A DNA stretch of 63,784 nt, filler included, from Intoshia linei (Eukaryota; Animalia; Orthonectida), in assembly GCA_001642005.1 (NCBI GenBank). It is 6 parts of 6 records of this genome, joined end to end, with 100 filler letters (N's around TTAATTAATTAA, not from the genome) between each part and the next. Parts side by side here need not be neighbours in the genome. Positions count along the whole stretch, not along the records: positions 36,035 to 53,103 come from LWCA01000815.1; 5 more parts are not named here. One strand, given 5' to 3'. The notes under the pieces were generated by a model. The model searched no databases and was not told where the DNA came from. It saw only the letters and a program-made list of their open reading frames with translations. Within the stretch, counting starts at the first letter, position 1, and each line of letters starts with the position of its first letter. Shown here in pieces: positions 35,935 to 53,203 of the stretch. Position numbers and translations under genes: made by a program.

Positions 35935-36198
35935 NNNNNNNNNNNNNNNNNNNNNNNNNNNNNNNNNNNNNNNNNNNNTTAATTAATTAANNNNNNNNNN
36001 NNNNNNNNNNNNNNNNNNNNNNNNNNNNNNNNNNAGGATACTGAATATATTTCGTCACATTACAAAGATAGAAATATTTTTATATATAATTTTATTTTTT
36101 CTTGGATTTGTTATTAATGAATATCTTTAGATTTGTAATAATATACATTGTATAACTTGAACACGAATTTAAAGATACATGATAAATAAAATGTAAAA

Positions 36199-39100
36199 TT
36201 AATGTATTTTTACAGATATTCCGGTGGATAATAAAATAATATTTATATATTGCACAATAGACGACTTGTAGTAAGATAATTTCTCCTAAATAACGAATTA
36301 ACTATTAATTCCATGCATCATTGCTAATATAAAATTAGTATACATCACCTCATTTTTTATATTTTCAATCTTTAATTTAAATCCAATATCAGATATACGA
36401 TTTGAATTGTAAAAAACTACAACAGTATTTTTAAATTGCAACTAAATTAAATGTATATATGGATGTAAATAAATATATTACCGATATAGATGAAACAAAT
36501 TGCAAATATCTCTTCAGCGTGAATTTCAATGTCATTGCATCAGTAAACGATACAGTAAAATCAAAAAATTGGGATTTCATCAAAATTGGAGTAATTAAAA
36601 CTTGCTAAAATGAAAAATAAATAATGATAAATATTAATTATACATAAAAAGGTAAAATTTGCATTTCTGATTTTAAGTTGATAAATTGTTTATAAATAGA
36701 AAGACAAATGGTGGATAAAATATTAATTTGACCAGGTGATGGTTTCTCCTTTGTATACAACAATCCAGAATCGTCAATTGATGATAAAATGTATATTCGA
36801 GACAGCTTAAATTGTTTCTTGGATTCCATGAAAGAATTCATACATTTTTTTTTGGTTTCCTCTAAATTAAAAGTCAACTAAAATTTAGTCTAAATGACAC
36901 AAAAATGATTAGTATTTTTTGTAATTAAAATAACAAAATTACCGAGCAAAGTGTCATTAAAATTCACATATAGTGTTCTTTTTTTCCAGTCAAAACTGAA
37001 CATTAGTTTTAAAAACCTCATAAAGATGGTAAAGCAAGATCTAATCAAAAATATTAAATACGCGATACAATTAAATATATCCTTAAATTTTTATCCATCA
37101 AATATTCCATGTAAAATTAAGAAATTTTCAATTTAATTAGCTCTACAAATTGAACAACAAAATTAACAAACTTACGTGGCTTTATGTACTGGAAAATTTT
37201 CTATATACAGAGATGCAATCAGTAATTCAATGGCTGAATTTTCGAAAATATTGGATAACATTTGATATGCGAGAAATCTTTTTATAATTCGTACGGATTG
37301 GCAATATGTATCATATGTGGTACTGATACTAAACAAGCTTATGTATTCGTTAGTTATTTATTTACAAATAACTTATTATTATGTGTCATGCATTAGGTTT
37401 GGAGCTTTCCGAACCGTGCCGTTAAATACAGGAATTTTCAAAAATTAAAGGTGATACAGTAATATAAAAATCGCTGAAAATCAAAGTTGTCTTAATTTCT
37501 CATTTAAAAGAACTATAACGTAGAATTACATGTTGTTTACGTTCAGATAAAAATTCTAATTATTTACATGAAAAAATTTTTCACCGTTGAATTTCCTATG
37601 TAAATTTAAAAATTGTTTATGCTAAAGCCCTGATTATTTTCAATTATTGAAATAATAATATAAATAATGTATTAGTTCCTATCAAAATGCATATGAAAGT
37701 AATGGGACTTAAGTTAATAACTAGAGTCCAAAATATTTAATTACCAGTTTATATAATTGTAAAACTTGTCCAAATTGGCTAGTTTATAAACATAGGAATT
37801 GGATAGGTTTGTTGTATCAAGGTGACCTTTGTTTTCCATCATTTTAATCATTTTTTCGTTGGTAAAAACCAAATTAAATGTGTAATTTTCCTAAAATAAT
37901 TAATTCAACAATACATTATATTAACGTAAAATCAATACAGGTATCCCTCGGTTAACGCGAAATTCGGTTAACTCGGTGTTTTGTTTTGTGTCACTTGCTT
38001 AATTAACGCGGTAAAAAATGAATTTAACGCGAATTTTAATATATTTATAAAAAAAATTTTAAAAATGGGATCCCTTCAAGTTGTCACAATATTACCTAAT
38101 TTTTTAACTTTTGACATACGTTTTTTTCAGTTTTATCAAATAATAATTGTTAATCAACGTACATTTACTATTTTCACTATAGTACAACATAATGTACAAT
38201 GTACATAATTTTATACTAAAGCGATGATTACTATGGATAAAAGGGTCAAAAGAATAATAAAGGCCAAAAAAACACATATAAAAAGATACCCCACTATTCA
38301 TCTTTAACGGAGAGGAAAGTAAAGAAAAGAGTAAATTTTGCCTACCGCTGTGGGGTAACCTCACAAGGATAAAAGGGTCAAAAGAATGATAGAGGCCAAA
38401 ATTACACATATAAAAAGATACTCCGTTTAGGAACCACTAGCTAAAAAGAAACCAATTTGGAGGGAAAATCAACCAACCTGAAATTTTTATCTGAGTAATA
38501 AAATATACTCCAATTGAGCAGGTAAAATGTTCAACAACTCCAATAAGCCGTCAATTGTGTAACAAAAAAAAGAGAATCGTATGATTTGTATTTTATCTAT
38601 ATTAATGAATAATACATTTTAACATTTTGTCGGGACACCTCCAATGCTCAAATGGAAGATGTGGTTACTTCGTAGTCGGAGGTGCTGGGAGTGAAATTTT
38701 TGTGTATATGCCTTATTTAGCATATAATTGGGAAAATAAGTATAGTAAAAGTCTATGAAACTACGGCAACCCTGAGTTAAGGTCAAACAATCTACACACT
38801 ATTTACTTACATAAATTTTAAAGAAGCATGAAATACATGTATTGATTATTTTGAGTCTGTAACATAAAAGTGACTACATCGCAAAAACAATGTAGCAGTC
38901 GTTTAGACGTTGCAATAAAATCGTAATATTTGGCAACTCTGACTGAAAACAGTAGTCTGAAACCATTAGTCTAGCAATAAAATAAATAAATCCAATTTTA
39001 CCATATCAACATCAACAGAATAATTTTTAATTTTGACTTTCAAATTGTACTTTTTCTTTAAAATATCAGCGAATTTAATAAGATATGCCATCATAATTCT

Positions 39101-41827
39101 ACAAAGTGATTCCTTGTCATTAGGCCACTTTCCAGTAGTTTCCAATTCACAATAAACTAAATATTTACAGAGTAAAACGGATTTTAACGTTGCATAAATT
39201 ATGTTAATTTATTTTTAAAATAAATGTAAAATATTGACATATAAATATAAATTTGTATATAAATGTGAATAGAAGGAGAGATTGTTTAGCACTCCCCTGA
39301 ACAAGGACGGATGTACTCAGGTGGACACAGAAGTCCTCCAAGGCTCCATTTTTTTGTAATTTCAATTTTAAAACAATGAAAAACCTTTAATGGAGTCAGT
39401 AATATTTTTCAAATCTTGAGAATATAAAATGTTGACATGTTCCTAAAAATAATTTAAAAAATAAAAGATAGAGTGGAATCCGCTTATAAGAGACACCGGT
39501 TATAAGGGACAAAAAGCTAAGCACGGAATCAAACGCTTGTTTTGTATATAAATCACAGACGGATAAAGAGACAAAAATCCGCTTATAGTTGTTTGGGACA
39601 GGCAATTTGTTTTTTAAAATGAATATTCAATATTTTTTTAAAATACTTTAATTAATTATAATTAAATTTTTAAATAAGTTTGGTTCAAAAAATTTCCTAA
39701 AAACCCCCCTTGAAAGTTTGGTTAAAAAAAATTTCCTAAAAACCCCCCTTAAAACTTTGGTTTAAAAAAAATTACTAAAACCCAAAATTAAACTAAAATA
39801 TAAATGAAAGTTTTACACATTCTATGAGTTAGTCATAGAATGTGTACATTTTACGACTTATCCATTTTTCAGATATAAGAGACGTCCGGTTATAAGGGAC
39901 AAATTGCTTGGTCCCGATGCGTCTCTTATAAGCGGATTCCACTGTATTTCAATTCTGAAATGCATCAGTTTAAAATTTACGATATATAATATGAAATTAC
40001 AAAGGTTTTCAACAAAATTGAATCAATGGGTAAAACATTTGCAACATTAATACAATTCCATTCATTGGAATTGATTACAATTTTTTTCAAAGCTTTGAAC
40101 GATTGTTGAATTTCATAAAAGAAACTTTCTTCAAGTTTACAAAATTTCACCATTTTCGTAGGTTCCATCTTATAATGGGAAATTTTTAACGAATTATAAA
40201 ACGTTAAAATACTAGACCTTTCAAAAGTATAAAATTTAGCTAAAAGAAAAGCCAAAATATCGGGTACAATACATTTTCTAGAAAATTCACTACCATCTTG
40301 AGCCCATAACACAGATTCACATATTTTACCATCTTTAAACCGACGCATTTCAGACTTTGGAGACCATAATGCTTTAAAATCTTTAATTTCTTGTGGTTTA
40401 TCTAGAGAAGGTCCATTAGTGACTAATTTCTTTGAGTCATCATTAAAAATCAAAGAAATACAAATATCTACATTTTTTAAATCAATGAAATTAATACTCG
40501 AAACTCTGATAAAATTGACCCTATCAGACATTCCTTTGTATAGTAATGTTTCCATTTCTTCACAAAAATGAGTCAGATTATTACTCAACACGTTACTGTC
40601 CATTTCACGTGTCTTGGATAAAATATTGACATGCTTAACAACAAAAGTAGCATCATAAATTGACCATAGATTGATTGGTGTAGAATCTTTATACATACAA
40701 CTAGAGTTTATGAAACGTTTGGAATCTTTGGCAAAATGATTCAATTCGTAGCATAAATTTTTGCGAATATAATACATTAAATTCACTTGAGGTTTAGTGT
40801 CAATTAAAAAAATAAGTGACATATTATCACTTTTATCATTAAATATATTGCAGTCTTCAATATCATCATTGAAATGCAAAAGGGTGTCACTCCATTCAAA
40901 ATTCAAATAATTCTTCATTTTTTCATTAGCACATTCGAAATATTTACAAATTTCATTAATAAACAAAATTTTTAATTGATTTGGAGTGACGTTGTTACCA
41001 CTAAGATTTTTTTTTTCAAAAATTAAAACGAGTATAAACAAAATTTCAATTTTTGATAAAGATTCGCCCAAAAAGTGACGACTGTTTTCAAAATGACAAA
41101 TCCAATTTTCGACAATTTCAACATGTTGTGGTTTCAAATGACATTTTTCGGCCCTAATCGAATATTTTTGTAAAAATGGGAATCTATAAATGTCTTCAAT
41201 TAACGTATTTCTAACAAAATGTAGGTAATTATCGTCAATTTCGTTAACTTTAATGTACTTGAAAGCGAAATTTTTTTCTGTAAATTTTTCTCTACATAAA
41301 GCAGGAAAAATTCTATATATAGTAGAATCGTTTTCAAATTGTAAGCTCAATATGGGCAATAGAATGTTGTTTCGATAAAAATTGTATTTTGTAGAGTTTT
41401 TGACGATATTTTCACAATTTTCCAAGGTTTCTTTAATTACCTCTAAAAAAGCACTTCTCTTGTAAAAATATACAAAATTGCTGACATCAGCAGCATTAAA
41501 TGTAGTTTCATTCATTTCTGCAAACAAATTCACGTAATATTGCCCATTACTACACAAATTTGAATAATATGAATACAATTTTACATTCTGAGGACTCTTC
41601 ACTACGATATTTTTTTCAAAATCCAATTCATGATTAGCAAAATTCCAAATATTTTCATAAATTTCAATATTTGTCGACTCTTTATTTATTAAAATTTTTT
41701 TTTCCTTTATATTGCCAAAAATATTTTTCAATAATTTTATTGTACGGGATATATCGTTGGTTTTCTTTTTGAATTGAGTACACTATTATTTATGTTTTAA
41801 TTTCAATTATATTTTTACCTGGTTCAT
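36199..41827 (-). CDS. NOL6: Nucleolar protein 6 (Nrap/Utp22), ~11 exons; start codon uncertain
   Basis: GPSLDKPQEIKDFKALWSPKSEMRRFKDGKICESVLW, VYCELETTGKWPND, VRIIKRFLAYQML, FMRFLKLMFSFDWKKRTLYVNFN and YTKEKPS all match Nrap motifs. Exons at 41782-40002, 39442-39385, 39156-39002, 37890-37745, 37328-37176, ~37040-36943, 36861-36645, 36604-36482, 36441-36349 and 36286-36199 (approximate) splice in frame with GT-AG. Confidence 0.92.
37938..38430 (+). mobile_element. pogo/Tigger-like left end followed by a ~132-bp direct duplication
   Basis: ta|caggtatccctcggttaacgcg start with repeated ttaacgcg. ggataaaagggtcaaaagaat...acacatataaaaagatac occurs at 38235 and 38367. Confidence 0.5.
38625..38727 (+). 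ncRNA. Candidate Sm-class small RNA of unknown identity
   Basis: GC-rich island with a CACCTCC/GGAGGTG stem enclosing a GAAG/CTTC hairpin, an Sm-type AATTTTTG (38695-38702), then a TATATGC/GCATATA hairpin. Confidence 0.3.
39265..39355 (+). ncRNA. RNU6ATAC: U6atac snRNA (minor spliceosome), antisense within NOL6 intron 39157..39384
   Basis: AAGGAGAGA-TTGT-TTAGCACTCCCCTGAACAAGGACGGA versus human AAGGAGAGA-AGG-TTAGCACTCCCCTTGACAAGGATGGA. This covers the AAGGAGAGA box, AGC triad and ISL. Ends in a T7 run. The 5' end is approximate. Confidence 0.92.
39349..39355 (+). terminator. RNA polymerase III oligo-T terminator of U6atac
   Basis: Run of 7 T closing the GC-rich U6atac body. Confidence 0.75.
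39471..39944. mobile_element. pogo/Tigger-type MITE in a NOL6 intron
   Basis: TIRs gagtggaatccgcttataagagac / gtctcttataagcggattccactg, TA TSDs, internal ccggttataagggacaaa repeats. Confidence 0.9.
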
Positions 41828-42653
41828 TTAGTGAGCTTTGATATATTAGATTTTCAATAATTTACAATTTGAGATTTGGAGAAATGTAGTGTATCTATAT
41901 TATCGCTCAATTAAAAAGATATCAATAATAATTTATCTCAATTTACTGTTAACGAAAAATATAAATTTTTTTACAACTAAACAGAACGATATATATTGCA
42001 TCAAAAAGGAAAAAAACGTGCATCTAATATTTAAGAAAAAAAAATGTTTAAATTTGATTTTGTTGATGGTTATATTAACCCTTCATATAAACTTTTTTGT
42101 AATTGTTTGAGTCGATTTGGACCGAAAACATTGACTAAAATTCGATTCTAATTCCCAATTATGAATCGATTGATTTTTTCTTCAAAGCAATATAGGGCAT
42201 GATGTATTGTACTAAGATAGTTGACTATTAAAATCTGCACCATTAATTAATTAAAAATTATTAAGTTAAAATATTGGTTTAATTATTTTATCGATAAATT
42301 GCAACCCTCAGCCTAGGTCGCGTATGACAAACAAATACCAGGTTAGATAAAAATTGTAGCTTCGATATGCAAATTAAAAAATTTTTTATAATTTATAAAA
42401 ACTAAATACCTGCGGTCCGTCAGATTCAAATAATATAGAAAAATTTTTATCAACTTTAATTTATTTCATATAATTTTTAATATTTATTATATATTTGCCA
42501 GATGTTGGGTATGTTGCCAGAATATTTATTCGTTATATACCTTATTATTTGTCAACCGTTTTTAATATTTTGCTTCTCATAGTTTTGGGTATATCAGTTA
42601 ATCTGATGATTTAAATATATCCAGAGAAGTTCTAAGATAGTTTCGAACAATTT

Positions 42654-42866
42654 CTAGTTTAATATGGATATATATTTAACAGATACTCCTTTTAATGATC
42701 CCTTTGCCTTTCTTTTTCTCTTGTTGGAAGGGTTTTCTATATATCGACGGATTGTGCGATGATCGCGTTCTAAATTTGAAGCTATTTCATTTATCGATAT
42801 TCCATTATCCAATATTTTCAGGATTTTATCCTTTTCATCAACAGTAAGTGATGTTGATTTACCCAT
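42654..42866 (-). mobile_element. Tc1/mariner transposase N-terminal HTH remnant
   Basis: MGKSTSLTVDEKDKI...GISINEIASNLERDHRTIRRYI, truncated. Confidence 0.75.
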
Positions 42867-43091
42867 AATTATCTTAAATTTTAATTAGCATAATAATTTG
42901 GCACACTAAAAATTACCCAAAAATATAAACTGTTAAATACAATGCTTTTTTTGATACAGTAAAGTTTTATATGATAAAAAAATCAATAGAATTAAGTGAC
43001 TACTTTTTTAATTATATTAATTAAACAGGTAGCTACATTATACCTGCAATACAAAATTTCAAATAAATTTTATTGGACTAGTCTTTTAACA

Positions 43092-44424
43092 TTATGTTAA
43101 TGGTGGACCTATATCCAAAGTGTTATCATCTGGAAATCTGTGTTCAGGTACTTCAAGGTTTAGCGGAGCGGGTCCTTGTCGAATTCTTCCAGATGTATCG
43201 TAATGTGATCCATGGCATGGGCAAAAGTAGCCATGATAGTCACCCTTTCCATATAGCGGTACGCAACCTAAAAATTGATTAGGAAATCACTTGAAATTAT
43301 AAATTCGAGAATAAATAAATAGTTTCTTCAGTTTATAATTTAGGGATAATCAAAAAGCTCCATGTGGACCTTTGGTTTATAATATTAAATGGTGTGCGCC
43401 CTCGAATATAATATTGTTAATAATTTTTTTTGGTAACTAATATGAAGCACTAATTATACGAATACTGTAAAAATGAACACAATGATTCTAATAGCGACTA
43501 AATTAAATAAAAAAGAATTTTTACCCAAATGAGTGCACACAGCTAAAGTCACAAGCCACTCTGGGCGAACGATTCTATCATCATCGTGTTCTGGGTCGCG
43601 TAGGGCTTTTAAATCCATACTTCGAGCCTAAATGCACATATTATGTATTGTAAAATAAATTTATAAAAATGTTTACTAATTCAATTTGAGCAGGGGTTCG
43701 GTGATGAACAAAAACTGGTTGATTCCTCCAGGTAACAGTAATGCATTTCCCTTCTTTAATTTCACTAATATCAATCTCTGAATTGGAGAGGGCTAATATA
43801 TCTCCAGGTAAATTAAAACTGGAAGCTACGGCTCGTAAACTATTTTTGACAACATAAATTGAAGGTAGGGCGATTGCTAACAATGTTGACAATTATAAAA
43901 AATAAATAAATTACCAGCACTCGCAACGGATGCTAAAATTTTTTTAGATTCATTAGTAACACTAGTTTGTTGATTAGGATCAAGACAATCGGATCGTCTG
44001 TGTTCGTCAAAATTTGGAGTAATAATATCATTATGGTATTTACGTTCTATTAAAAAGTTTTAATATAATTGTCGTTGAATTAAAAAACAATAAAACCTCC
44101 ATAACACGTGTTGTAAGCTGAACACGTTAATAACATGGTTGCGTTTTTGAATCCACAGACAGAATATCGTGCACCATTAACAAAAGTATTTCTAGTCAAC
44201 GGTGTAACTTTTTTCATACGTCTTTCGATAACTCTTCCGCTATACGGCATTTCGTTGCGTTTATTAAATGTTGGTGACAAGTTAATACTTTGAAATTTTG
44301 AAAACCCATTCTTACAATTTGAAACGGAAACATTTTGACATTCTTTGGATAAAATTCGAAATTTATATGTCACATTTCCAATTTCGAAAATGTTGAATGT
44401 TTTTCTACAGTTATTCCTCAGCAT
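43092..44424 (-). CDS. UQCRFS1: Cytochrome b-c1 Rieske iron-sulfur subunit, mitochondrial, 5 exons
   Basis: [90 protein letters not shown]. Confidence 0.97.
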
Positions 44425-44904
44425 TGCCGTATATCAAGATTGATTTATCTATATAATTTACTATAGTTTCAGATTGTATTAAGTTTAATTTAAACAGTTT
44501 ATATCGTTACATACAATAAATTGCAGTACTAAATTGTATATTTGCATGTTTTCAAATATTTAAAGTTTTGTTTTATCTATCGAAACTTAATTATACATTT
44601 TAGTATAATTTGTATTAATTGGACGCAACTATTTTACGTATATTTTTATCTAAACATTTACATTATTTTTCACTTGACGATTTATCTATAATTACAACCA
44701 TGTCAAACTAGAACTCGTTTCAAATTCGATGACGATTTATCAAGAAATAATTTTTCAGTGGAGATTATAATTTTTTTTTGCAATTAGAATATTTTTAAAA
44801 AGACCACTTGAAAACGAATACACATTCGTTGTAATGCCGCATTACTAATGCGTTCCGGCATGGTTTTGAGTTGGACATTTATTGTATTGTATTATTTTAG
44901 ATAT

Positions 44905-47900
44905 ATGTACCGAAAAACTCAGCCCGTAGTGTCGAAAATGGAAAACCTTCCAATTTTTGATAATCAGAATAAAGTTGAAAATTTGCAAATCAAAAATCTA
45001 GTTATACAAGAAGAGGTTCATGATAATACAAACCAAAAAAATAATGATAGCCCACTTGAATCTGTTTCTGAACTTACACCATTGCAAAAAGAAGAAAATG
45101 GAATTCAAGGTTTTTTTATTTTTTTAGTAATATTCTCTTTTAAAAGCCGAATTAATGAAAGGTTTTATGCGACTTAAAAATATTTTAGGTTTATAAATTA
45201 CTATGAGTTATTAAAATAAAAGATATGTCCAAAAATATAATTAATTACCATTTTCCAGAATTCATGAGGAAAAATCCCATTTTACCAAAACTTAACGAGA
45301 AAACCTTAATCCAACTCTAAAAGAAAAATCAAATTTTTTTATTTATTACGTTTTTTTAATATTTTTTTAAAAAATACAATTCTACCAAATCTTAAGAAAA
45401 ACCACTTAATCCAACTCCAAAAGAGAAAATCCAAATTTACCAACGCTTAAGAGAATTATCCAATTTATAATATTTGTTTTTAAAATTACAACTTTACCAA
45501 ATGTAAGCAAAAAAACCACTTAATCCAACCTAAAAGAAAACCCTATTTTACCAATTTTTAAAGGAGAAATCCATTATTTCTAATTTTTTTGAAAATAGCC
45601 TGATTAAAAATATACATAACATTTACATTGAATGTAATAAATGTAAATATATAAAATGATGATATTAATATTTTAGGGGTCCGTGATAAATAATTTAAAT
45701 TTTTAACTTAATTATTTGACGTTTTTTTAAAATATCAAGTTTTTTTTAAGATTTGAAAATCAATAAAATATTTACCGTAACTATTTTACCGATAATTTAC
45801 GGGTAAAGTTTAGTGATTGTGCCGGGACAAAATTCCCGGGATATTTAATAATTTCAGGGAATTAAATTTCCCAAGATTTCCCAAAAAAAATTGAGACATA
45901 ATTGTATTTGATTTAAGTTTGTTATTATTATGAAAATATGATTATATAATATTTAAAATTTACTATTTAAAAAATCCCACCACTAATAAAATTTAATCAA
46001 AAATACCATTTCAAGCCCTCATGGAAAAATTGACTTACACCAATATTTTTTTTAAAATCCGATTTTACTAAATATTACGAAAAAAATCCCCTTTATCAAA
46101 CCACAAATAAAAAATCTAATTTTCCAGCCCTTTGGATCCCATGGAAAAATATACTTTTTCCAATACTTTTTTTAAAAACCTCTTATTTCAACCACAAATT
46201 ACTAACGCTTAATGGAATTATTTTTTTTTTCCAATATTATTTTGAAAAATATTATGAGTTGTTACGAACTAGAACGCTATCATCAAGATTGTTAAAATTA
46301 AAGGAAGCCCTTATGACCGTTCATCCTACCTCAACACAAAATGAAAGAAATTTTTCTACTGCTTTTAATTTCGCTACGAATTGTAGAACGCGTTTAAAAG
46401 ACGAATCTATAAATATTATATGTGTTTTGAAACACTTTTTCAACAATCTAATTAAATTTGTAAATTTCAATCTAGATTTGTGTTATTTTATTAATTAAAT
46501 TTTTTTTTGTTTTTAAAATTAATTAAGGTTTATAAAATTTTTAATGCTTCTATATTATATAGGAATAAAAAATTTTTATTTTTCCCGGAAAATTCCGGGG
46601 ACCCGAGAAATCTAAATTAATAATTTACTGGTTCTTGACTTTTGTCATTTCCGGGAAATCACAATCATTAGTAAATTTATATTGATTGTTTATCTTAGTC
46701 CGTAAGGTATTCCTTTTAAAATTATTTTAAATGTGTCTATATAATTCCATTTAGAAAAGGAAATTGTGAAATTTACTATAGAAAATGGTCAAAACGAAGC
46801 AAAAGTAATTGATATTCCAAAAAATATTATAGAACAAGACCCAAATACACCTCCAATAATAGAAAAGATTGGTGTATTTATTAATAGTGACACAACAGCT
46901 GAATTTGCTATGATTTGTTCATTTATAGAACAGTTTTCAGTGTCAGCTGAGCTGCCTGATTTGACAAATTTTGTAGAATTACGATCAATTTTAGAAGAAT
47001 CAACAATCAATGAAAGATTGGTTATTTTTCTTCTCCATTTGATTAAAAAGATTAGAAAAGTAAACATTAGTGTTTCGAAATGGCAGCTTAACTTGAAAAG
47101 AATTGTTCAGCACAATATGCCACATTTTACGAAATTAATTGAAAAACAACTATTCGAAAATTTACCATTATTAAAAAAACTATGCATAATTCGTGGAATG
47201 ATGGAGTTATTATTCACCAGATATAAAAAATTTGCAAACATTTTAAATTTAAATAAAGAGAAAATAAAATCTTTGCCTATGGGTCGAGATTTATATGGAA
47301 ATTTATATTGGGTCATGGTTGACAATCAGAGGAATTTGTTAATTTTTAAAGAAAATATTAACTTTTCTATTGAAATTGTGTGTAATTCAATGTTTGGTTT
47401 GGATTTCTTGGTTAAGGAGATTAAATTTCAAACTTTTAAATCTGATCCATTCTTTAAAATCGTTTCATTAAACTCTGATGATGAAAAGGTTTTGGTGAAT
47501 GTGAAAAAAGAAAAGGAAAATGGTGTAAAAAAGAAGATTAAAAAACAAAACAATGTTAAGGAAGAAAAATTGAAGTTTGATTCCAAAAATATCCCAGAAT
47601 TGAAAATTAAACTGGAACCACCAAATTTAGAAAATTTAACCAAAAAAAAAATATTGATTGAAAAGGTTGACAAATCTGAAGAATCTAAAAAAATTAAAGA
47701 GTTAAAAGAAATTGTACCTGTGAAAACTGAACCGAAAGATAAAATTACAGTAAAAATTGAAAAACCAAAAACTACTAAAGAACTGACACGAGAAAGTATG
47801 CCAAGATCAAATGTCACTCGTAGGTCTGTACGACTGGCAGCATTGAAGACTGTAGAAAATCCAATAGAATCTCCTCTTCCACCCAAAAAAAAAACGAAAC

Positions 47901-50900
47901 AGAAAATCTTATTAAAATCACCATCTAAACCAAAACAATTAAAACGCGACATTTCTTTCTCAGAGTCTGAACTAAACGAATCAGATTCAAGTGCTGAGCG
48001 CTACGCTACTAATAAACGTTCAAACAAACACAAGAAAGGTTTATTAAATTTTAGGAATAGAATGAAACATTTGAGAGACAAAAATATTATAGAATTTTCA
48101 AAAAGTAGTACAAGTGATGTAAAGGTTGTTTCAAAACCCAAACAGTTACATCGTTATGGAAGGCCGGTTTGGCTGAAAATGCTTGAAGATGAATATCTTG
48201 AAAATGACGCTAGATATCAAAATCATTATGATTCTTCCGATCACGATTCCTTTAAATGTGATAGTGATTTTGATTTTGATTCCCAAGTTTTGGATGTTAA
48301 TGTATCCAAGTTTGTTTATAATTCTGAAAGAATTGATCAACTTTTGTATGAAAAATTACATTGTATTGATGATTACAATAAAAGTATCGAAAGTTTATGT
48401 TGTAACAGGTGTGATAGATTGGAAAAACCTTTGACAATTATTATTTGTGATACATGTAAAGATATGTATCATATGAAATGTATTCAACCTATTTTACATG
48501 TTGTACCATCCGAGTATTGGATTTGTCAAAATTGCGATCGGGTATTTATTTTTTTTAAATTTTATTTTTCATCAACTTTTTTTTCAATTTAAATTTTGTA
48601 TTTTTGATTAGTTCTTTAAATATATATTATCATTTAAACTTGAAAATAAACATTAAAAAGTAAATATTGCATTTATATAGAAAAAATTACAGGTATAACA
48701 TTGATAACCTATTTCAAACTTATATTTTATTAAAATTTTTTAATATTTTAAAAATAATATTGTCACTTTCACATTTTAATTGATATTTATGGTTTTGAGT
48801 GGTTTCTACTTTTTTTTATATTATTTATCTCATGATTCCTTGAAAATGGTGCAAGTTTACTACATTCGTGTTTTTATGATTTTTAGAGATTTATCTGACA
48901 AGTATACAATATTCTAATTGTATTTTAGAATTTGCTGATTCAAAATTTAAACCACTTTTCAATGTCTGTGAACGAAACTACTCGAAAAGCAAATATTATG
49001 AAAAAGAGGTATTTTAATTTTGTTTGTTTTGTAGTGATAATTCCAATACCTACAGAGGTATATTTATTTTGTATTCTTTACAATTTTTCTGTTTCAGTTT
49101 ACATTCTTATTTCTAGAAAAGCACGACTTGAATTTGTTCAAATGAGTATGGAGAATTTGGTGGTATTTTTATATTTTAAAAGTCTATGACTGTTTTTTAG
49201 CCTAAAAAGATTAAAAAACCAAATAAAGAGTACTTGTTTGATGATGATTGTGTCATGCGTTCCAATAGAGTTAAGAAGCAAGTCAATTATAAATTTGATG
49301 ATTATGATAAGATGATTGATTCTGCTTTAGGTTTTTTATTTTTCATATTTATCTATTAAAGTTTTTTTAGATCAACCCGTCAAATCTAATTCTAATGTAA
49401 ATTACGGACATGGTAAAGTTGAGCGTGAATTAAGTGACAAGGATACTGATTATAGAGGAAAATCGTAAATTTTTTATATATTGGATTGTAATATTTGAAC
49501 CGGCGGGGAACACGTTGAAACTATAATCAAATTTCGAAAATAATTAGTTTTATCCCTGACTATGTATAAATTTAAATTAGCAAGGGTGGAGTCCACGGAT
49601 GATTTTAATTGTTGATATTTTAAATTTTAGGATTTGTTTTTGCTAAAGTACTGCAAATCTAATATTAATAGTTGAGACAGTTATTATTAACATTTTTTAT
49701 TTACAAATAAACTAGAAAAACAACACATTTTTTAATAAAAAATTGATCTAATGATAACGTTCATGATTTTAAGAACTATCCTAGAGTTTGGGTTATAAAA
49801 TTTAAAAAAAGGTTTGTATTTATCGCGTCAGTATTTTAATTCGTAAAATGTCAGTATTTTAGATGGTTTGTCAGTATAAATAATTGATTGTCAGTATTTA
49901 AATTTGAAGGGCAGTAAAAAAAATTATTTTGTCAATTTTTATGTAATTCAATACTGACAATTTTTTATTAAAATACTTCCCTTAAAAAATGATATTTTGT
50001 GGTTTGGACATAAAGGTTCCAATTTTTGGGTTTAAAAACTAACTTTTAATTTTTGTTTTTGAAAGTTCTAAGACTGATTTTTAGCAACTTTTACTTCATA
50101 TATTAATTTAATTTGGCCTTAATTCCCAGTCTATGTACGTTCAATGTACGCTGCTGATCCTCACTATAATACCAAAATCACATTTAGTTATATACGCCTT
50201 GCATAAAAGTTTTAGAATCCCTCTTAAAGAGGTTATAACAAGAAGACTAAATGTTGAATTTTCTGCAAATATATATTTTTTAATAATTTTAAGCTGATGT
50301 TTTGAACCTCCCCGGCCGTCGAGTCAAAACTGGTTTTGTCGGTATATTATAGTTAAATGTCGCATTGTAAAAAAATTATAAATTCACCGAAAAAAATATT
50401 AAACTCATCCAAATGGCGCTCACATCAGCTTCAGCGACCCTGCAATAAATCATGAAACTAATGTATTGTATTTAATATTTTTATTATTTAGTGACTGCGA
50501 ATCAACAAGTAGTGAAAATTCATTCGACAGTTATAGATGTTCTCTCCGAACTAGGCGTCCCATTATCGATTTTATTAGTATGGGAAAACATTTAATATAA
50601 ATTAAAAATATACATAGACGACAACAGCGAAGACGACGTATACGACCCTAAGGGAAGTCGTCGAACCAAAAAAATAAAATCTCGAAATACTCGTCGCACT
50701 AGAAGGAGAATCATTGAAAGCGAAGAAGAACCAATGTCAGACTTATCTAATGATTCTTCCGTGAGTAGTAAAATGAGCCTGCACGACAGCACTGAAAATT
50801 CTGCAGCAGGCACCAAACATTACAATTTTCAATATAATTTAATTTAGAATCTGAAAAACATTCTACCATCGAAAAAACGCAATCAGATGCACACTCTCAA

Positions 50901-50990
50901 GTATCAGACACATCAAACATGTCTGGCATCTCCAAACAAAAAAAAAGAATAATTTCCGAATCTGAGGAAGACGAAAAAAATGAAATTTAG
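44905..50990 (+). CDS. RSF1: Remodeling and spacing factor 1-like (DDT/WHIM + PHD), ~9 exons; start uncertain
   Basis: EFAMICSFIEQF, PMGRDLYGNLYW (WHIM), PHD CNRC...IICDTCKDMYHMKCIQPILHVVPSEYWICQNC, RLEFVQMSMENL and RSNRVKKQVNYKFDDYDKMIDSA match RSF1. Main exon 46755..48541. Confidence 0.88.
45250..45600 (+). repeat. Degenerate ~100-bp tandem repeat in an RSF1 intron; related sequence at ~45970-46240
   Basis: Recurring aaaacc(a)cttaatccaac...aaagaaaa and ttttacca units. Confidence 0.6.
45811..46670 (+). mobile_element. Internally deleted hAT element retaining the C-terminal dimerisation domain
   Basis: TIRs tagtgattgtg / cacaatcatta, 7/8 TSD gtaaagtt/gtaaattt, subterminal cccggg motifs. ORF 46259..46498 LMTVHPTSTQNERNFS...RTRLKDESI. 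Confidence 0.85.
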
Positions 50991-51243
50991 ATAAATTTAT
51001 ACTTGTAAATTGTTTCTGTAATTTAATTATTTATATAATTTTGTAAAAATAGATTGATGATTAAACGTTTTTTATGTTTTATTTCAATGTAAATTTACTA
51101 ACGAATTTGGATTATTATCGACATTAAATATCAAAATTTGTTCAATATGTTCAATATCAACTTGTAAACAATTATTGGAAAATTATACAAGATGCATTCT
51201 TTGTGCAACTTTATTTTTGTCTACATGAAAAATTTTTAAAAAT

Positions 51244-52806
51244 ATGAGTGAAAACAGCATTGAACGGTCAAGGTTGACCCAGAATATTAAATTGATTACC
51301 AAAGGATTAATAAACAATTTCAATTCATTTAAAATTAATAAAAAAATGAAAAATATAGTATTAACGAAATACGATCGTATCTTTTTGTGGAAATTTGTTG
51401 CGGAACTGACCATGACAGACAACGTTAATTTGCAATACAAAGCAGCTTTTAAAATTGCCAAAGAAAAACCCAATGAATATCAAAATAAATTTGGTAATTT
51501 TTATATAAACATAAATAAAAATTCAAAGCATCTTACAGAAGGCTGATGGATCGAAAATGGTTAAAGTTGGCTAAGACGGAGGCGTTCGTCGGTGAAGGTG
51601 GTTTAATTGAAAATGCTACTTTGATTGAAGAAATTATCATAATAGAAAGACCAAATATTACGTATTGTCCAGAATTGCATGTTACTTCGATATTGTTGTG
51701 TCAACATTTAGAACCACAAAATTCTTATTTGATTTTAACCAGACTTTTTAATAAGTCTTTGATCAATGAATCTCATATTACTTATTTAAACGGGATTTAC
51801 GTTTTAATTGAAATTATCAAAAAATATTGCAGGGTATTTTATTTTCATTTTTCTGTACAACGGTTTGTTTAGAATAAATTGGCTAAAAAAATTATTCTAT
51901 TCAAGGATAATAGCGAAACTTTTTTTCTCAATTGGAAGTTTTGGGTTTTCAATTTACCCCAAAATATTTTGGTATTCATGATTATGCAAGTTTAATACCA
52001 TTTGTAATTTTTATTTTAGTTGTATCTAATGGATCGTCTCATTTTAAAAGGCATCAAATGCTTGTACAAAGCTTGTATTGTTATTTTAATTCTTTATTTT
52101 AAAACAAGTAATCTTAAGAATGTATATAATAGAGCCCTACAATGGGCAATAAAGTAGCCTAGAGTGAAGTGGTTCTTAGACGTAAAACTCATCATTGCCA
52201 ATATTTTATTGTTGTCGGTGACTACATTTTTTAATATTAATCAATTTCAAATAATCAAATGATTAATAATTTAATTAAATTTTTTAGTGTGTGGTAATGT
52301 TTTGAAGTGTATAAATCGAATTTTGACGTGATTAGATTGAAATTGAGTTTAAAATTTAAAGGAATATTCATAGTAAATTATTAATTATAACATTTTACTT
52401 GGGAAACCACCCTTGCAAGGCTTGGGCCATGCTTCATTAATTTGCAATAATTATTTTCATTATTACAGATTCAAAAAGTGTTCAAAATGTGGTTGATGAT
52501 GATATCGTTGAATTTGTCAATGTGTACAATTGGGAATTAAATAAATTTATCAAGGTAAATGTAGAAAAATAATGTTATCAATTATTTCCTCTTCAAATAT
52601 TTTTTTTATTTTTATTAATAATCTAGGTTTACAATTCAATTAATTCATTTTCGCGGCGTGATATTTTAAAAATTTCTCTAGTTTTTTTTAAAAAAGCTAA
52701 AACGAAAGATTATGAAATTTTGTTGGATAAAGGATTGAGTGAAGTTAGTGTTATGTGTACACCCCCCTTCCCCCGACAAAACCTTAGAGCACATGTATTA
52801 TATTGA
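51244..52806 (+). CDS. TBC1D24: TBC1D24/Skywalker-like TBC-domain protein, 6 exons visible; may continue into the gap
   Basis: RPNITYCPELHVTSILL...LINESHITY...IIKKYC...FFSNWKFWVFNLP...MDRLILKGIKCLYKACIVIL versus human FPDISFCPALPAVVALL...LIDQSFLAF...LVNKYC...YADWQRWLFGELP...[20 protein letters not shown]. Intron 51494-51528 joins the two listed ORFs. Confidence 0.8.
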
Positions 52807-53203
52807 AATATAAGGAAAACTAAAATAAATTGTAATCTAATTTTTTGAATACTAAAACAATATGGTATATCAGTTATTGCCCCGAATTTTAAATTGTTAA
52901 TTATGTATACTTTTTTTATAATTTGAAAATGAAAAAAAGTCGAAAAAAATATGCGACAAAAGTGCTCTAATGCTTTTTAATTTACAGCAAAATAGGTACA
53001 ATATTTTTTATTTAAAACATAATTTTATAACTTTAATAATGAGTTCTTTCACCTTTATTTGTAATAACTTCAAAAATTCTAGAAGGCATACTTGCAATTA
53101 AGGNNNNNNNNNNNNNNNNNNNNNNNNNNNNNNNNNNNNNNNNNNNNTTAATTAATTAANNNNNNNNNNNNNNNNNNNNNNNNNNNNNNNNNNNNNNNNN
53201 NNN

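What the first reader, a model, noticed from the sequence alone, without database searches (positions are those of the whole stretch)
39265..39355. Shortened, divergent U6atac snRNA antisense inside a 228-nt NOL6 intron
Seen: the U6atac catalytic core (AAGGAGAGA box, AGC, ISL region) is nearly identical to human. The 3' half is unrelated and the gene is only ~90 nt to the T-run versus ~125 nt in human, with just a small GGAC/GTCC hairpin. Known: U6atac is diagnostic of the U12-dependent spliceosome, which several compact animal genomes (e.g. C. elegans) have lost. Inference: this highly derived, tiny-intron animal retains a possibly streamlined minor spliceosome, and the gene is a Pol III unit transcribed against a Pol II housekeeping gene.
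Basis: partly seen in the sequence, partly recalled or inferred. Interest (0 to 1): 0.8.

Follow-up and report, generated by a model that had tools for sequence, protein, structure and literature searches.

The report
Short U6atac snRNA gene in Intoshia
A roughly 90-base gene for U6atac, the catalytic RNA of the rare "minor" intron-splicing machine, sits backwards inside an intron of the NOL6 gene of the tiny parasite Intoshia linei; it is real, has a cut-down tail, and is a fairly ordinary new member of a known RNA family.

Summary
The piece is the whole 17,069-bp contig LWCA01000815.1 of the orthonectid Intoshia linei. The Rfam U6atac model (RF00619) hits 39263-39355 on the + strand at 37.6 bits (gathering score 33, E 3e-6). 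It is the only Rfam hit on the contig.

The AAGGAGAGA box, the AGC triad and the internal stem-loop are conserved: 33 of 38 core positions match the consensus. The 3' domain is unrelated. The model's 40-position 3' stem-loop region is covered by 16 unaligned bases. What is there is a marginal 7-pair hairpin followed by a run of seven T.

The gene lies antisense in a 228-nt GT-AG intron (39157-39384) of NOL6/Nrap. It is a 50% GC island between 15-17% GC flanks, which argues for selection and against a decayed relic.

Whether the minor spliceosome works in this animal could not be tested. No other Intoshia contig was reachable and the contig holds no U12-type intron. A published survey ran the same model on this genome (PMC10639083) but its text gives no result for Intoshia. 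Verdict: a genuine, probably functional, 3'-shortened U6atac; a new member of a known kind; modest interest.

The parts
39265..39355 (+). U6atac snRNA gene. The likely first base is G39265; the model alignment starts at A39263. The end is the T-run.
   Evidence: RF00619, 37.6 bits, above the gathering score of 33, E 3e-6. 50% GC island in AT-rich flanks.
39273..39281 (+). [quoted passage not shown]
   Evidence: Identical to the Rfam consensus and to all insect comparators. The role of the box is taken from PMC2396436.
39282..39291 (+). UUGUUUAGCA: the segment that pairs with U12 (helix I) and U4atac (stem I), containing the AGC triad at 39288-39290. It has one extra U and G-to-U relative to the consensus AGGUUAGCA.
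   Evidence: Covariance-model alignment. The ant-garden comparator L002 also has UGUUUAGCA.
39289..39314 (+). Internal stem-loop: 3+6 pairs on the 5' side, loop GAACA, 2-nt bulge A39307-C39308 (consensus AU).
   Evidence: Minimum-free-energy fold -6.5 kcal/mol, 72% of the ensemble, z -1.48. The same fold appears in the whole molecule.
39320..39339 (+). 3' hairpin GGUGGAC-ACAGAA-GUCCUCC. It stands where other U6atac RNAs have a long 3' stem-loop.
   Evidence: Predicted, but no better than shuffles (z -0.03). The loop lacks CUACUU, the 65K/RBM41 site described in PMC4980772.
39349..39355 (+). Run of 7 T: Pol III terminator and source of the U-tail.
   Evidence: Direct reading. Aligned to the model's terminal U-run.
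39240..39247 (+). TATAAATA, a candidate TATA box of a type-3 Pol III promoter, at -25 to -18 of G39265.
   Evidence: Direct reading. Weak evidence: the flanks are 15% GC, other TATA-like words lie nearby, and the insect comparators have their TATA about 7 nt further upstream.
39157..39384 (-). Host intron of NOL6/Nrap: 228 nt, GTTTTTCA...ATATTTAG, phase 1.
   Evidence: Exact spliced mapping of the annotated protein P0001.
36202..41827 (-). NOL6/Nrap (UTP22) host gene, 12 exons. Intron lengths from the 5' end: about 36, 558, 228, 31, 987, 416, 135, 81, 39, 40, 63 nt.
   Evidence: Pfam Nrap domains 1, 3 and 4. 100% match to the I. linei protein P0001. Gene table. Exon map.

Best explanation
This is the (or a) functional U6atac snRNA gene of Intoshia linei. 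An independent Pol III unit of about 90 nt is transcribed from the + strand out of an intron of NOL6, starting near G39265 and ending in the T7 run.

Its 5' two-thirds would do what U6atac does elsewhere:
- The UUUAGCA segment pairs with U12 (helix I) in the active spliceosome and with U4atac (stem I) beforehand.
- The internal stem-loop forms the catalytic metal-binding element.

The 3' domain is reduced to about 36 nt with at most one short hairpin. It lacks the long terminal stem-loop that binds 65K/RBM41 in humans.

Shown: identity, conservation of the core, gene limits, position and orientation. Inferred: transcription by Pol III, function in splicing, and dispensability or replacement of the 3' stem-loop.
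For: - Covariance-model hit above the curated threshold, and the only Rfam hit in 17 kb.
- All core motifs are present and 33 of 38 core positions match the consensus. In the same genome the host protein is so diverged that a word-seeded, length-limited search of 5.8 billion proteins returned only itself.
- The internal stem-loop folds as expected.
- The whole 84 nt before the T-run is 50% GC, and its 3' part 56%, against 15% and 17% GC in the intron on either side. Only 0.06% of 84-nt windows of the contig reach that level; the other windows at 50% GC or more fall inside the span of the Rieske-protein gene.
- The GC island ends exactly at a T7 terminator.
- The box is the AAGGA ('AG') type, as in the spiralian Lottia (PMC2396436).
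- 3' ends of U6atac are known to differ strongly between phyla, and the distal 3' stem-loop is dispensable in human cells (PMC4980772).
Against: - The score is modest: 37.6 bits against 89-95 bits for insect genes.
- The conserved 3' stem-loop is missing and the replacement hairpin is not statistically supported.
- The bulged U of the internal stem-loop is C, and the helix-I segment carries an insertion.
- No promoter element can be verified.
- No expression data, partner snRNA, minor-specific protein or U12-type intron of this species could be examined. No U12-type intron occurs on the contig.
- I. linei is listed among species with heavy minor-intron loss (PMC10639083).
Confidence: 0.78

Rival explanations
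1. A relic. The gene is a recently inactivated or orphaned U6atac left behind after the lineage lost minor splicing. It is still recognisable but no longer used, and the truncated 3' domain is the start of decay.
For: - The 3' stem-loop is lost, the internal stem-loop bulge is U to C, and there is an insertion in the helix-I segment.
- The score is low.
- The species is grouped with heavy or complete minor-intron losers (PMC10639083).
- U6atac hits occur in lineages that lack other minor snRNAs (PMC11347168, PMC10639083, section 25).
- Remnant snRNA genes have been proposed before (PMC2396436).
Against: - In a genome whose introns are 15-17% GC, a dead 84-nt sequence would not stay at 50% GC with sharp edges ending at an intact T7.
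- The changes avoid the box, the AGC triad and all internal stem-loop pairs.
- The 3' part is as GC-rich as the core, as expected if it too is constrained.
Confidence: 0.15
2. A retro-copied or dispersed pseudogene. The real U6atac gene would lie elsewhere in the genome.
For: - snRNA pseudogenes are common in animals (PMC2396436).
- TTTGTA occurs on both sides of the gene, at 39252-39257 and 39353-39358, and could be read as a target-site duplication.
Against: - There is no A-tail.
- A 6-mer repeat is expected by chance in sequence this AT-rich.
- The copy is full-length, from the 5' end to the terminator.
- The compact genome, the sharp GC island and the intact core suggest the working copy.
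Confidence: 0.05
3. A chance match, or a variant of the major U6 snRNA.
For: U6 and U6atac belong to one Rfam clan and share the AGC / internal stem-loop architecture.
Against: - E 3e-6.
- No ACAGAGA box. The sequence has AAGGAGAGA and CACUCCCCU, which are specific to U6atac.
- cmscan keeps the best family of the clan, and that is U6atac.
Confidence: 0.02

Closest known systems
U6atac snRNA, Rfam RF00619 (vertebrate-type, about 125 nt)
   Same: The 5' splice-site box AAGGAGAGA, the AGC triad, the geometry of the internal stem-loop (5-nt loop, 2-nt bulge), the terminal U-run, and a GUG-type 5' start.
   Different: - About 35 nt shorter.
- Both 3' elements of the model are missing: the small hairpin at positions 53-64 and the long stem-loop at 80-117.
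- The hairpin loop is ACAGAA, not CUACUU.
- The bulge is AC, not AU.
- One extra U before the AGC segment.
- The 5' leader is 8 nt instead of 11.
Insect U6atac genes recovered here from metagenome contigs (L002-L016; 105-107 nt, 89-95 bits)
   Same: They also lack the small hairpin at model positions 53-64. Their core is the same. L002 shares the UGUUUAGCA variant. They have a TATA box upstream and a T-run downstream.
   Different: The insects keep a 13-14-pair two-part 3' stem-loop (z -1.6 to -3.2). Their TATA ends near -25, whereas the Intoshia word ends at -18.
Drosophila and Trichinella U6atac (divergent 3' ends; PMC4980772, PMC2396436)
   Same: They set the precedent that only the 5' 'business end' is conserved. 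Their 3' ends cannot replace the human one in vivo.
Human RNU4ATAC in CLASP1 intron 2 (PMC12703291)
   Same: A minor-spliceosome snRNA gene lying antisense inside an intron of a protein-coding gene.
   Different: It is a different snRNA, transcribed by Pol II, in a very large intron. Here the snRNA gene fills 40% of a 228-nt intron.

Membership tests
U6atac snRNA (RF00619) | Covariance-model score at or above the curated gathering score | tested here: met
   37.6 bits against 33; E 3e-6; full model span 1-126.
U6atac snRNA (RF00619) | 5' splice-site recognition box AAGGAGAGA (not the ACAGAGA of U6) | tested here: met
   Exact at 39273-39281. There is no ACAGAGA in the gene.
U6atac snRNA (RF00619) | AGC triad followed by an internal stem-loop with a bulge | tested here: met
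   AGC at 39288-39290. Stem-loop at 39289-39314 with a 5-nt loop and a 2-nt bulge. The bulge base is C where the consensus has U.
U6atac snRNA (RF00619) | Long 3' terminal stem-loop (model positions 80-117; in humans the binding site of 65K/RBM41, loop CUACUU) | tested here: not met
   The model's local end skips 40 positions against 16 bases. Only a 7-pair hairpin with loop ACAGAA is present, z -0.03. This element is variable between phyla, and its distal part is dispensable in human cells (PMC4980772).
U6atac snRNA (RF00619) | Pol III terminator (T-run) at the 3' end | tested here: met
   T7 at 39349-39355.
U6atac snRNA (RF00619) | External type-3 Pol III promoter (TATA near -30, PSE near -55) | tested here: inconclusive
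   TATAAATA lies at -25 to -18, but the flanks are 15% GC and hold several TATA-like words. No other Intoshia snRNA gene was available to define a PSE.
U6atac snRNA (RF00619) | Base pairing with U4atac (stems I and II) and U12 (helix I) of the same species | not testable with these tools
   Only this contig of the genome is reachable. No U4atac or U12 lies on it. A GC island in a neighbouring intron shows no excess complementarity to the U6atac.
U6atac snRNA (RF00619) | Expression as a stable small RNA | not testable with these tools
   No read data are accessible.
Functional minor (U12-dependent) spliceosome in this species | U12-type introns, the other minor snRNAs and minor-specific proteins are present | not testable with these tools
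   The motif matches on the contig lie antisense to the annotated genes and are at chance level: RTATCCTT twice against 1.6 expected, TCCTTAAC twice against 0.67 expected. PMC10639083 surveyed the species, but its text gives no counts.

The most novel reading that the evidence does not exclude
Intoshia runs a pared-down minor spliceosome around a minimal U6atac of about 88 nt. This U6atac has lost the 3' terminal stem-loop that tethers 65K/RBM41. It carries a register-shifted helix-I segment (UUGUUUAGCA) and a C in the catalytic bulge, with matching changes expected in its U12 and U4atac. It would be among the shortest animal U6atac RNAs. It would also be a natural experiment on which parts of the RNA are dispensable.
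Probability: 0.3. Interest if true: 0.5.

Novelty: new member of a known kind. Interest (0 to 1): 0.3.

Why it matters
Orthonectids are among the most reduced animals, and the minor spliceosome has been lost repeatedly in reduced or fast-evolving lineages. A constrained U6atac gene suggests that Intoshia still needs minor splicing despite heavy intron loss.

Its stripped 3' domain gives a natural deletion variant that agrees with human mutagenesis showing the distal 3' stem-loop is dispensable. The practical value is modest. The family model finds the gene without difficulty, a published survey has already run that model over this genome, and divergent U6atac 3' ends are known.

Tried and rejected
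- U12-type intron motifs on the contig. RTATCCTT matched twice (1.6 expected by chance) and TCCTTAAC twice (0.67 expected). All four matches lie antisense to the annotated genes, so none marks a minor intron.
- Statistical support for the 3' hairpin and for the whole-molecule fold: none (z -0.03 and +0.62). That is expected for an RNA that works paired to partners.
- Promoter comparison with insect U6atac genes. It is informative for TATA spacing only, and no shared PSE was seen.
- A second snRNA in the neighbouring 987-nt NOL6 intron. The GC island at 38621-38715 has a Sm-like AAAUUUUUG followed by a hairpin. It gave no Rfam hit at E up to 10, a fold z of -0.39, and no excess complementarity to the U6atac against shuffles. 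I rejected it as a U4atac-like partner; its nature is left open.
- Literature search for any description of orthonectid minor-spliceosome parts. Only the pan-eukaryotic survey lists the species, and without details in its text or held supplement.
- Searches for minor-specific proteins of Intoshia were not run. No query sequence was available from a tool, and I did not type sequences from memory.
Protein searches used single ORF pieces by reference.
- None of the fetched loci was taken for human. The metagenome pattern was written to match the non-vertebrate loop variant, and no human sequence was compared. The Rfam consensus served as the reference.

Full report
**What the sequence is.** The piece 36035-53103 is the complete contig LWCA01000815.1 (17,069 bp) of assembly GCA_001642005.1, from the orthonectid Intoshia linei.
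- The 584-aa ORF at 39977-41731 (-) is 100% identical to the species' annotated 1004-aa [quoted passage not shown].
- The exact-protein look-up returns this contig with four called genes: RabGAP-TBC, a PHD protein, a Rieske protein and Nrap/NOL6.
- Taxonomy: Spiralia, Orthonectida.
- The contig is 26.7% GC.

**The observation.** cmscan against all 4227 Rfam families gives one hit at gathering threshold: U6atac (RF00619), 39263-39355 on the + strand. It scores 37.6 bits against a gathering score of 33, with E 3e-6, and spans the full model.
- With permissive filters and E up to 5, the only other match is a chance-level bacterial sRNA.
- The search space here is 17 kb x 2 strands x 4227 families, about 144 Mb-equivalents. 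That is larger than one family searched against a genome of some 43 Mb on both strands. On that basis the hit would stay significant genome-wide.
- The core motifs, read from the sequence, are AAGGAGAGA at 39273-39281, AGC at 39288-39290 and T7 at 39349-39355.
- In the model alignment, 39 of 51 5' positions equal the consensus. Between the box and the end of the internal stem-loop, 33 of 38 match, with one inserted U.
- There is no ACAGAGA, and the stretch CACUCCCCU is the U6atac form. This is not a major U6.

**The internal stem-loop.** It folds as in the family.
- Pairs: G39289-U39314, C-G, A-U, then U39293-A39311 through C39295-G39309.
- A 2-nt bulge at A39307-C39308, then three more pairs closing the 5-nt loop GAACA.
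- Relative to the consensus the loop is UGAAC instead of UUGAC, and the bulge is AC instead of AU.
- The bulged U is the counterpart of the metal-site bulge of U6, as I know the family. The consensus letter is lower-case in the Rfam model, so it is not invariant there. All seven sequences of my small alignment except Intoshia have U.

**The 3' domain.** The model's 3' stem-loop region, 40 positions, is skipped by a local end against 16 unaligned bases. The small hairpin at model positions 53-64 is only nominally aligned, with non-standard pairs.
- What exists is GGUGGAC (39320-39326), loop ACAGAA, then GUCCUCC (39333-39339).
- Its energy equals that of shuffles (z -0.03).
- The loop lacks CUACUU, the motif bound by the C-terminal RRM of 65K and by RBM41 in human U6atac and U12 (PMC4980772, PMC11039992).

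**Comparators.** I scanned metagenome contigs with a pattern written for the non-vertebrate loop variant.
- 15 loci came back, judged to be insect DNA from their sample names: termite gut and ant fungus garden.
- 14 of them carry full U6atac genes of 105-107 nt scoring 89-95 bits.
- These also lack the small hairpin but keep a 13-14-pair 3' stem-loop (z -1.6 and -3.2).
- So Intoshia, at 91 nt to the end of the T-run, is about 15 nt shorter than these insect genes and about 35 nt shorter than the 126-position model. The difference is the loss of the terminal stem-loop.
- One comparator (L002) shares UGUUUAGCA, so the G-to-U change before the AGC is a natural variant. The extra U is specific to Intoshia within this set.

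**Is it under selection?** Three observations say yes.
- The 84 nt from G39265 to the T-run are 50% GC (5' part 46%, 3' part 56%). The intron on either side is 15% and 17% GC.
- Only 0.06% of 84-nt windows on the contig are as GC-rich. The other windows at 50% GC or more fall within the span of the Rieske-protein gene.
- The island ends at an intact terminator.
- The host protein has diverged so far that the word-seeded, length-limited search found no other protein at E below 1e-5. Even so, the RNA core keeps 87% identity to a pan-eukaryotic consensus. A long-dead copy in this mutational environment should have lost both the composition and the motifs.
- This is an inference, not a measurement. 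No sister genome was available.

**Context.** An exact spliced mapping of the annotated protein gives 12 exons on the - strand. All introns checked are GT-AG.
- The U6atac lies in the third intron, 39157-39384, 228 nt, phase 1. It sits between a 58-nt exon and a 155-nt exon.
- The species' median intron is 57 bp (PMC6543705). This gene also has introns of 31-63 nt. The snRNA gene plus about 108 nt of upstream sequence accounts for the size of this one.
- The whole presumed promoter region is intronic.
- TATAAATA at 39240-39247 would be at -25 to -18 of G39265. In the insect genes the TATA ends near -25.
- With so many TATA-like words in the flanks, neither the promoter nor the exact start is settled. 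A start a few bases further downstream cannot be excluded.
- Antisense-intronic placement has precedent: human RNU4ATAC in CLASP1 intron 2 (PMC12703291).

**What it most likely does.** As in other eukaryotes, the RNA would:
- enter a di-snRNP with U4atac, through stem I on UUUAGCA and stem II on the internal stem-loop strands;
- be delivered to U12-type introns and replace U11 at the 5' splice site through AAGGAGAGA;
- pair with the 5' end of U12 and refold its internal stem-loop to build the catalytic centre (family knowledge; PMC3201867, PMC2396436).

From my recollection of the human partner sequences, which no tool checked here:
- GUUU could pair with U12 positions 8-11 (AAAC), shifting helix Ia by one register.
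- AAGGACGG would call for a G in U4atac where other animals have A.

These are predictions for the genome-wide search, not results.

**What is not shown.** U6atac alone does not prove a working minor spliceosome.
- Surveys report lineages with U6atac hits but incomplete snRNA sets: nematodes in PMC11347168, and chironomids and copepods in PMC10639083.
- Larue and Roy include I. linei among species chosen for "significant/complete minor intron loss". They ran the same Rfam models on it, but neither the text nor the held supplement gives its numbers.
- On this contig the U12-type motifs occur at chance level and antisense to the genes.
- No other Intoshia DNA, no partner snRNA, no minor-specific protein and no expression data were within reach of the tools.

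**Comparison and novelty.** It works like U6atac and meets the family's score threshold and core-motif tests. It fails one family feature, the 3' terminal stem-loop. That feature is known to be variable, not interchangeable between phyla, and in its distal part dispensable in human cells (PMC4980772).
- I file it as a new member of a known kind with a reduced 3' domain.
- It is probably already present in automatic survey tables, but I found no description of it in the literature I could search.
- Interest is modest. It would rise if the genome-wide follow-up showed a matching, equally reduced set of partners.

**Procedural notes.**
- No contig was taken for human, and no human sequence was compared.

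Noticed in passing
window 39443-40000 (element 39468-39947): The neighbouring 558-nt NOL6 intron holds an element of about 480 nt bounded by 27-nt terminal inverted repeats, 39468-39494 and 39921-39947, 96% complementary. Their 20-mer core occurs nowhere else on the contig. Inside are 38-39-nt tandem repeats at 39676-39783. It looks like a MITE-type DNA transposon insertion.
   Followed up: partly
window 38621-38750, in the 987-nt NOL6 intron 37891-38877: A 48% GC island that on the + strand reads a 7-pair stem CACCUCC/GGAGGUG, then AAAUUUUUGUG (Sm-site-like), then the hairpin UAUAUGC-CUUAUUUA-GCAUAUA. The words AUGCCUUA and GGAAAAUAA loosely recall a U12 5' end as I remember it. There was no Rfam hit at E up to 10, the fold z was -0.39, and there was no excess complementarity to the U6atac. 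Its nature is unknown.
   Followed up: partly
window 38235-38292 and 38367-38424: A 58-nt direct repeat, 91% identical and 132 nt apart, in the same 987-nt intron. It is probably repeat or transposon debris that accounts for part of the intron's size.
   Followed up: no
window 39002-38971 and other NOL6 introns: The gene mixes very small introns (31, about 36, 39, 40, 63 nt) with four large ones (228, 416, 558, 987 nt). Two of the large ones were seen to carry an insert: the U6atac gene in the 228-nt intron and the inverted-repeat element in the 558-nt intron. The 987-nt intron carries a direct repeat and a GC island. The 416-nt intron (37329-37744) was not examined.
   Followed up: partly
L002 4394-4587 (-) and 2367-2473 (-): In one insect-derived metagenome contig, from an ant fungus garden sample, a U2 snRNA gene lies about 1.9 kb from the U6atac gene on the same strand.
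   Followed up: no
L012 789-870: A 5'-truncated U6atac match (model positions 24-126, 50.8 bits) in a metagenome contig. It is probably a pseudogene, and it shows that partial U6atac copies exist in insects.
   Followed up: no
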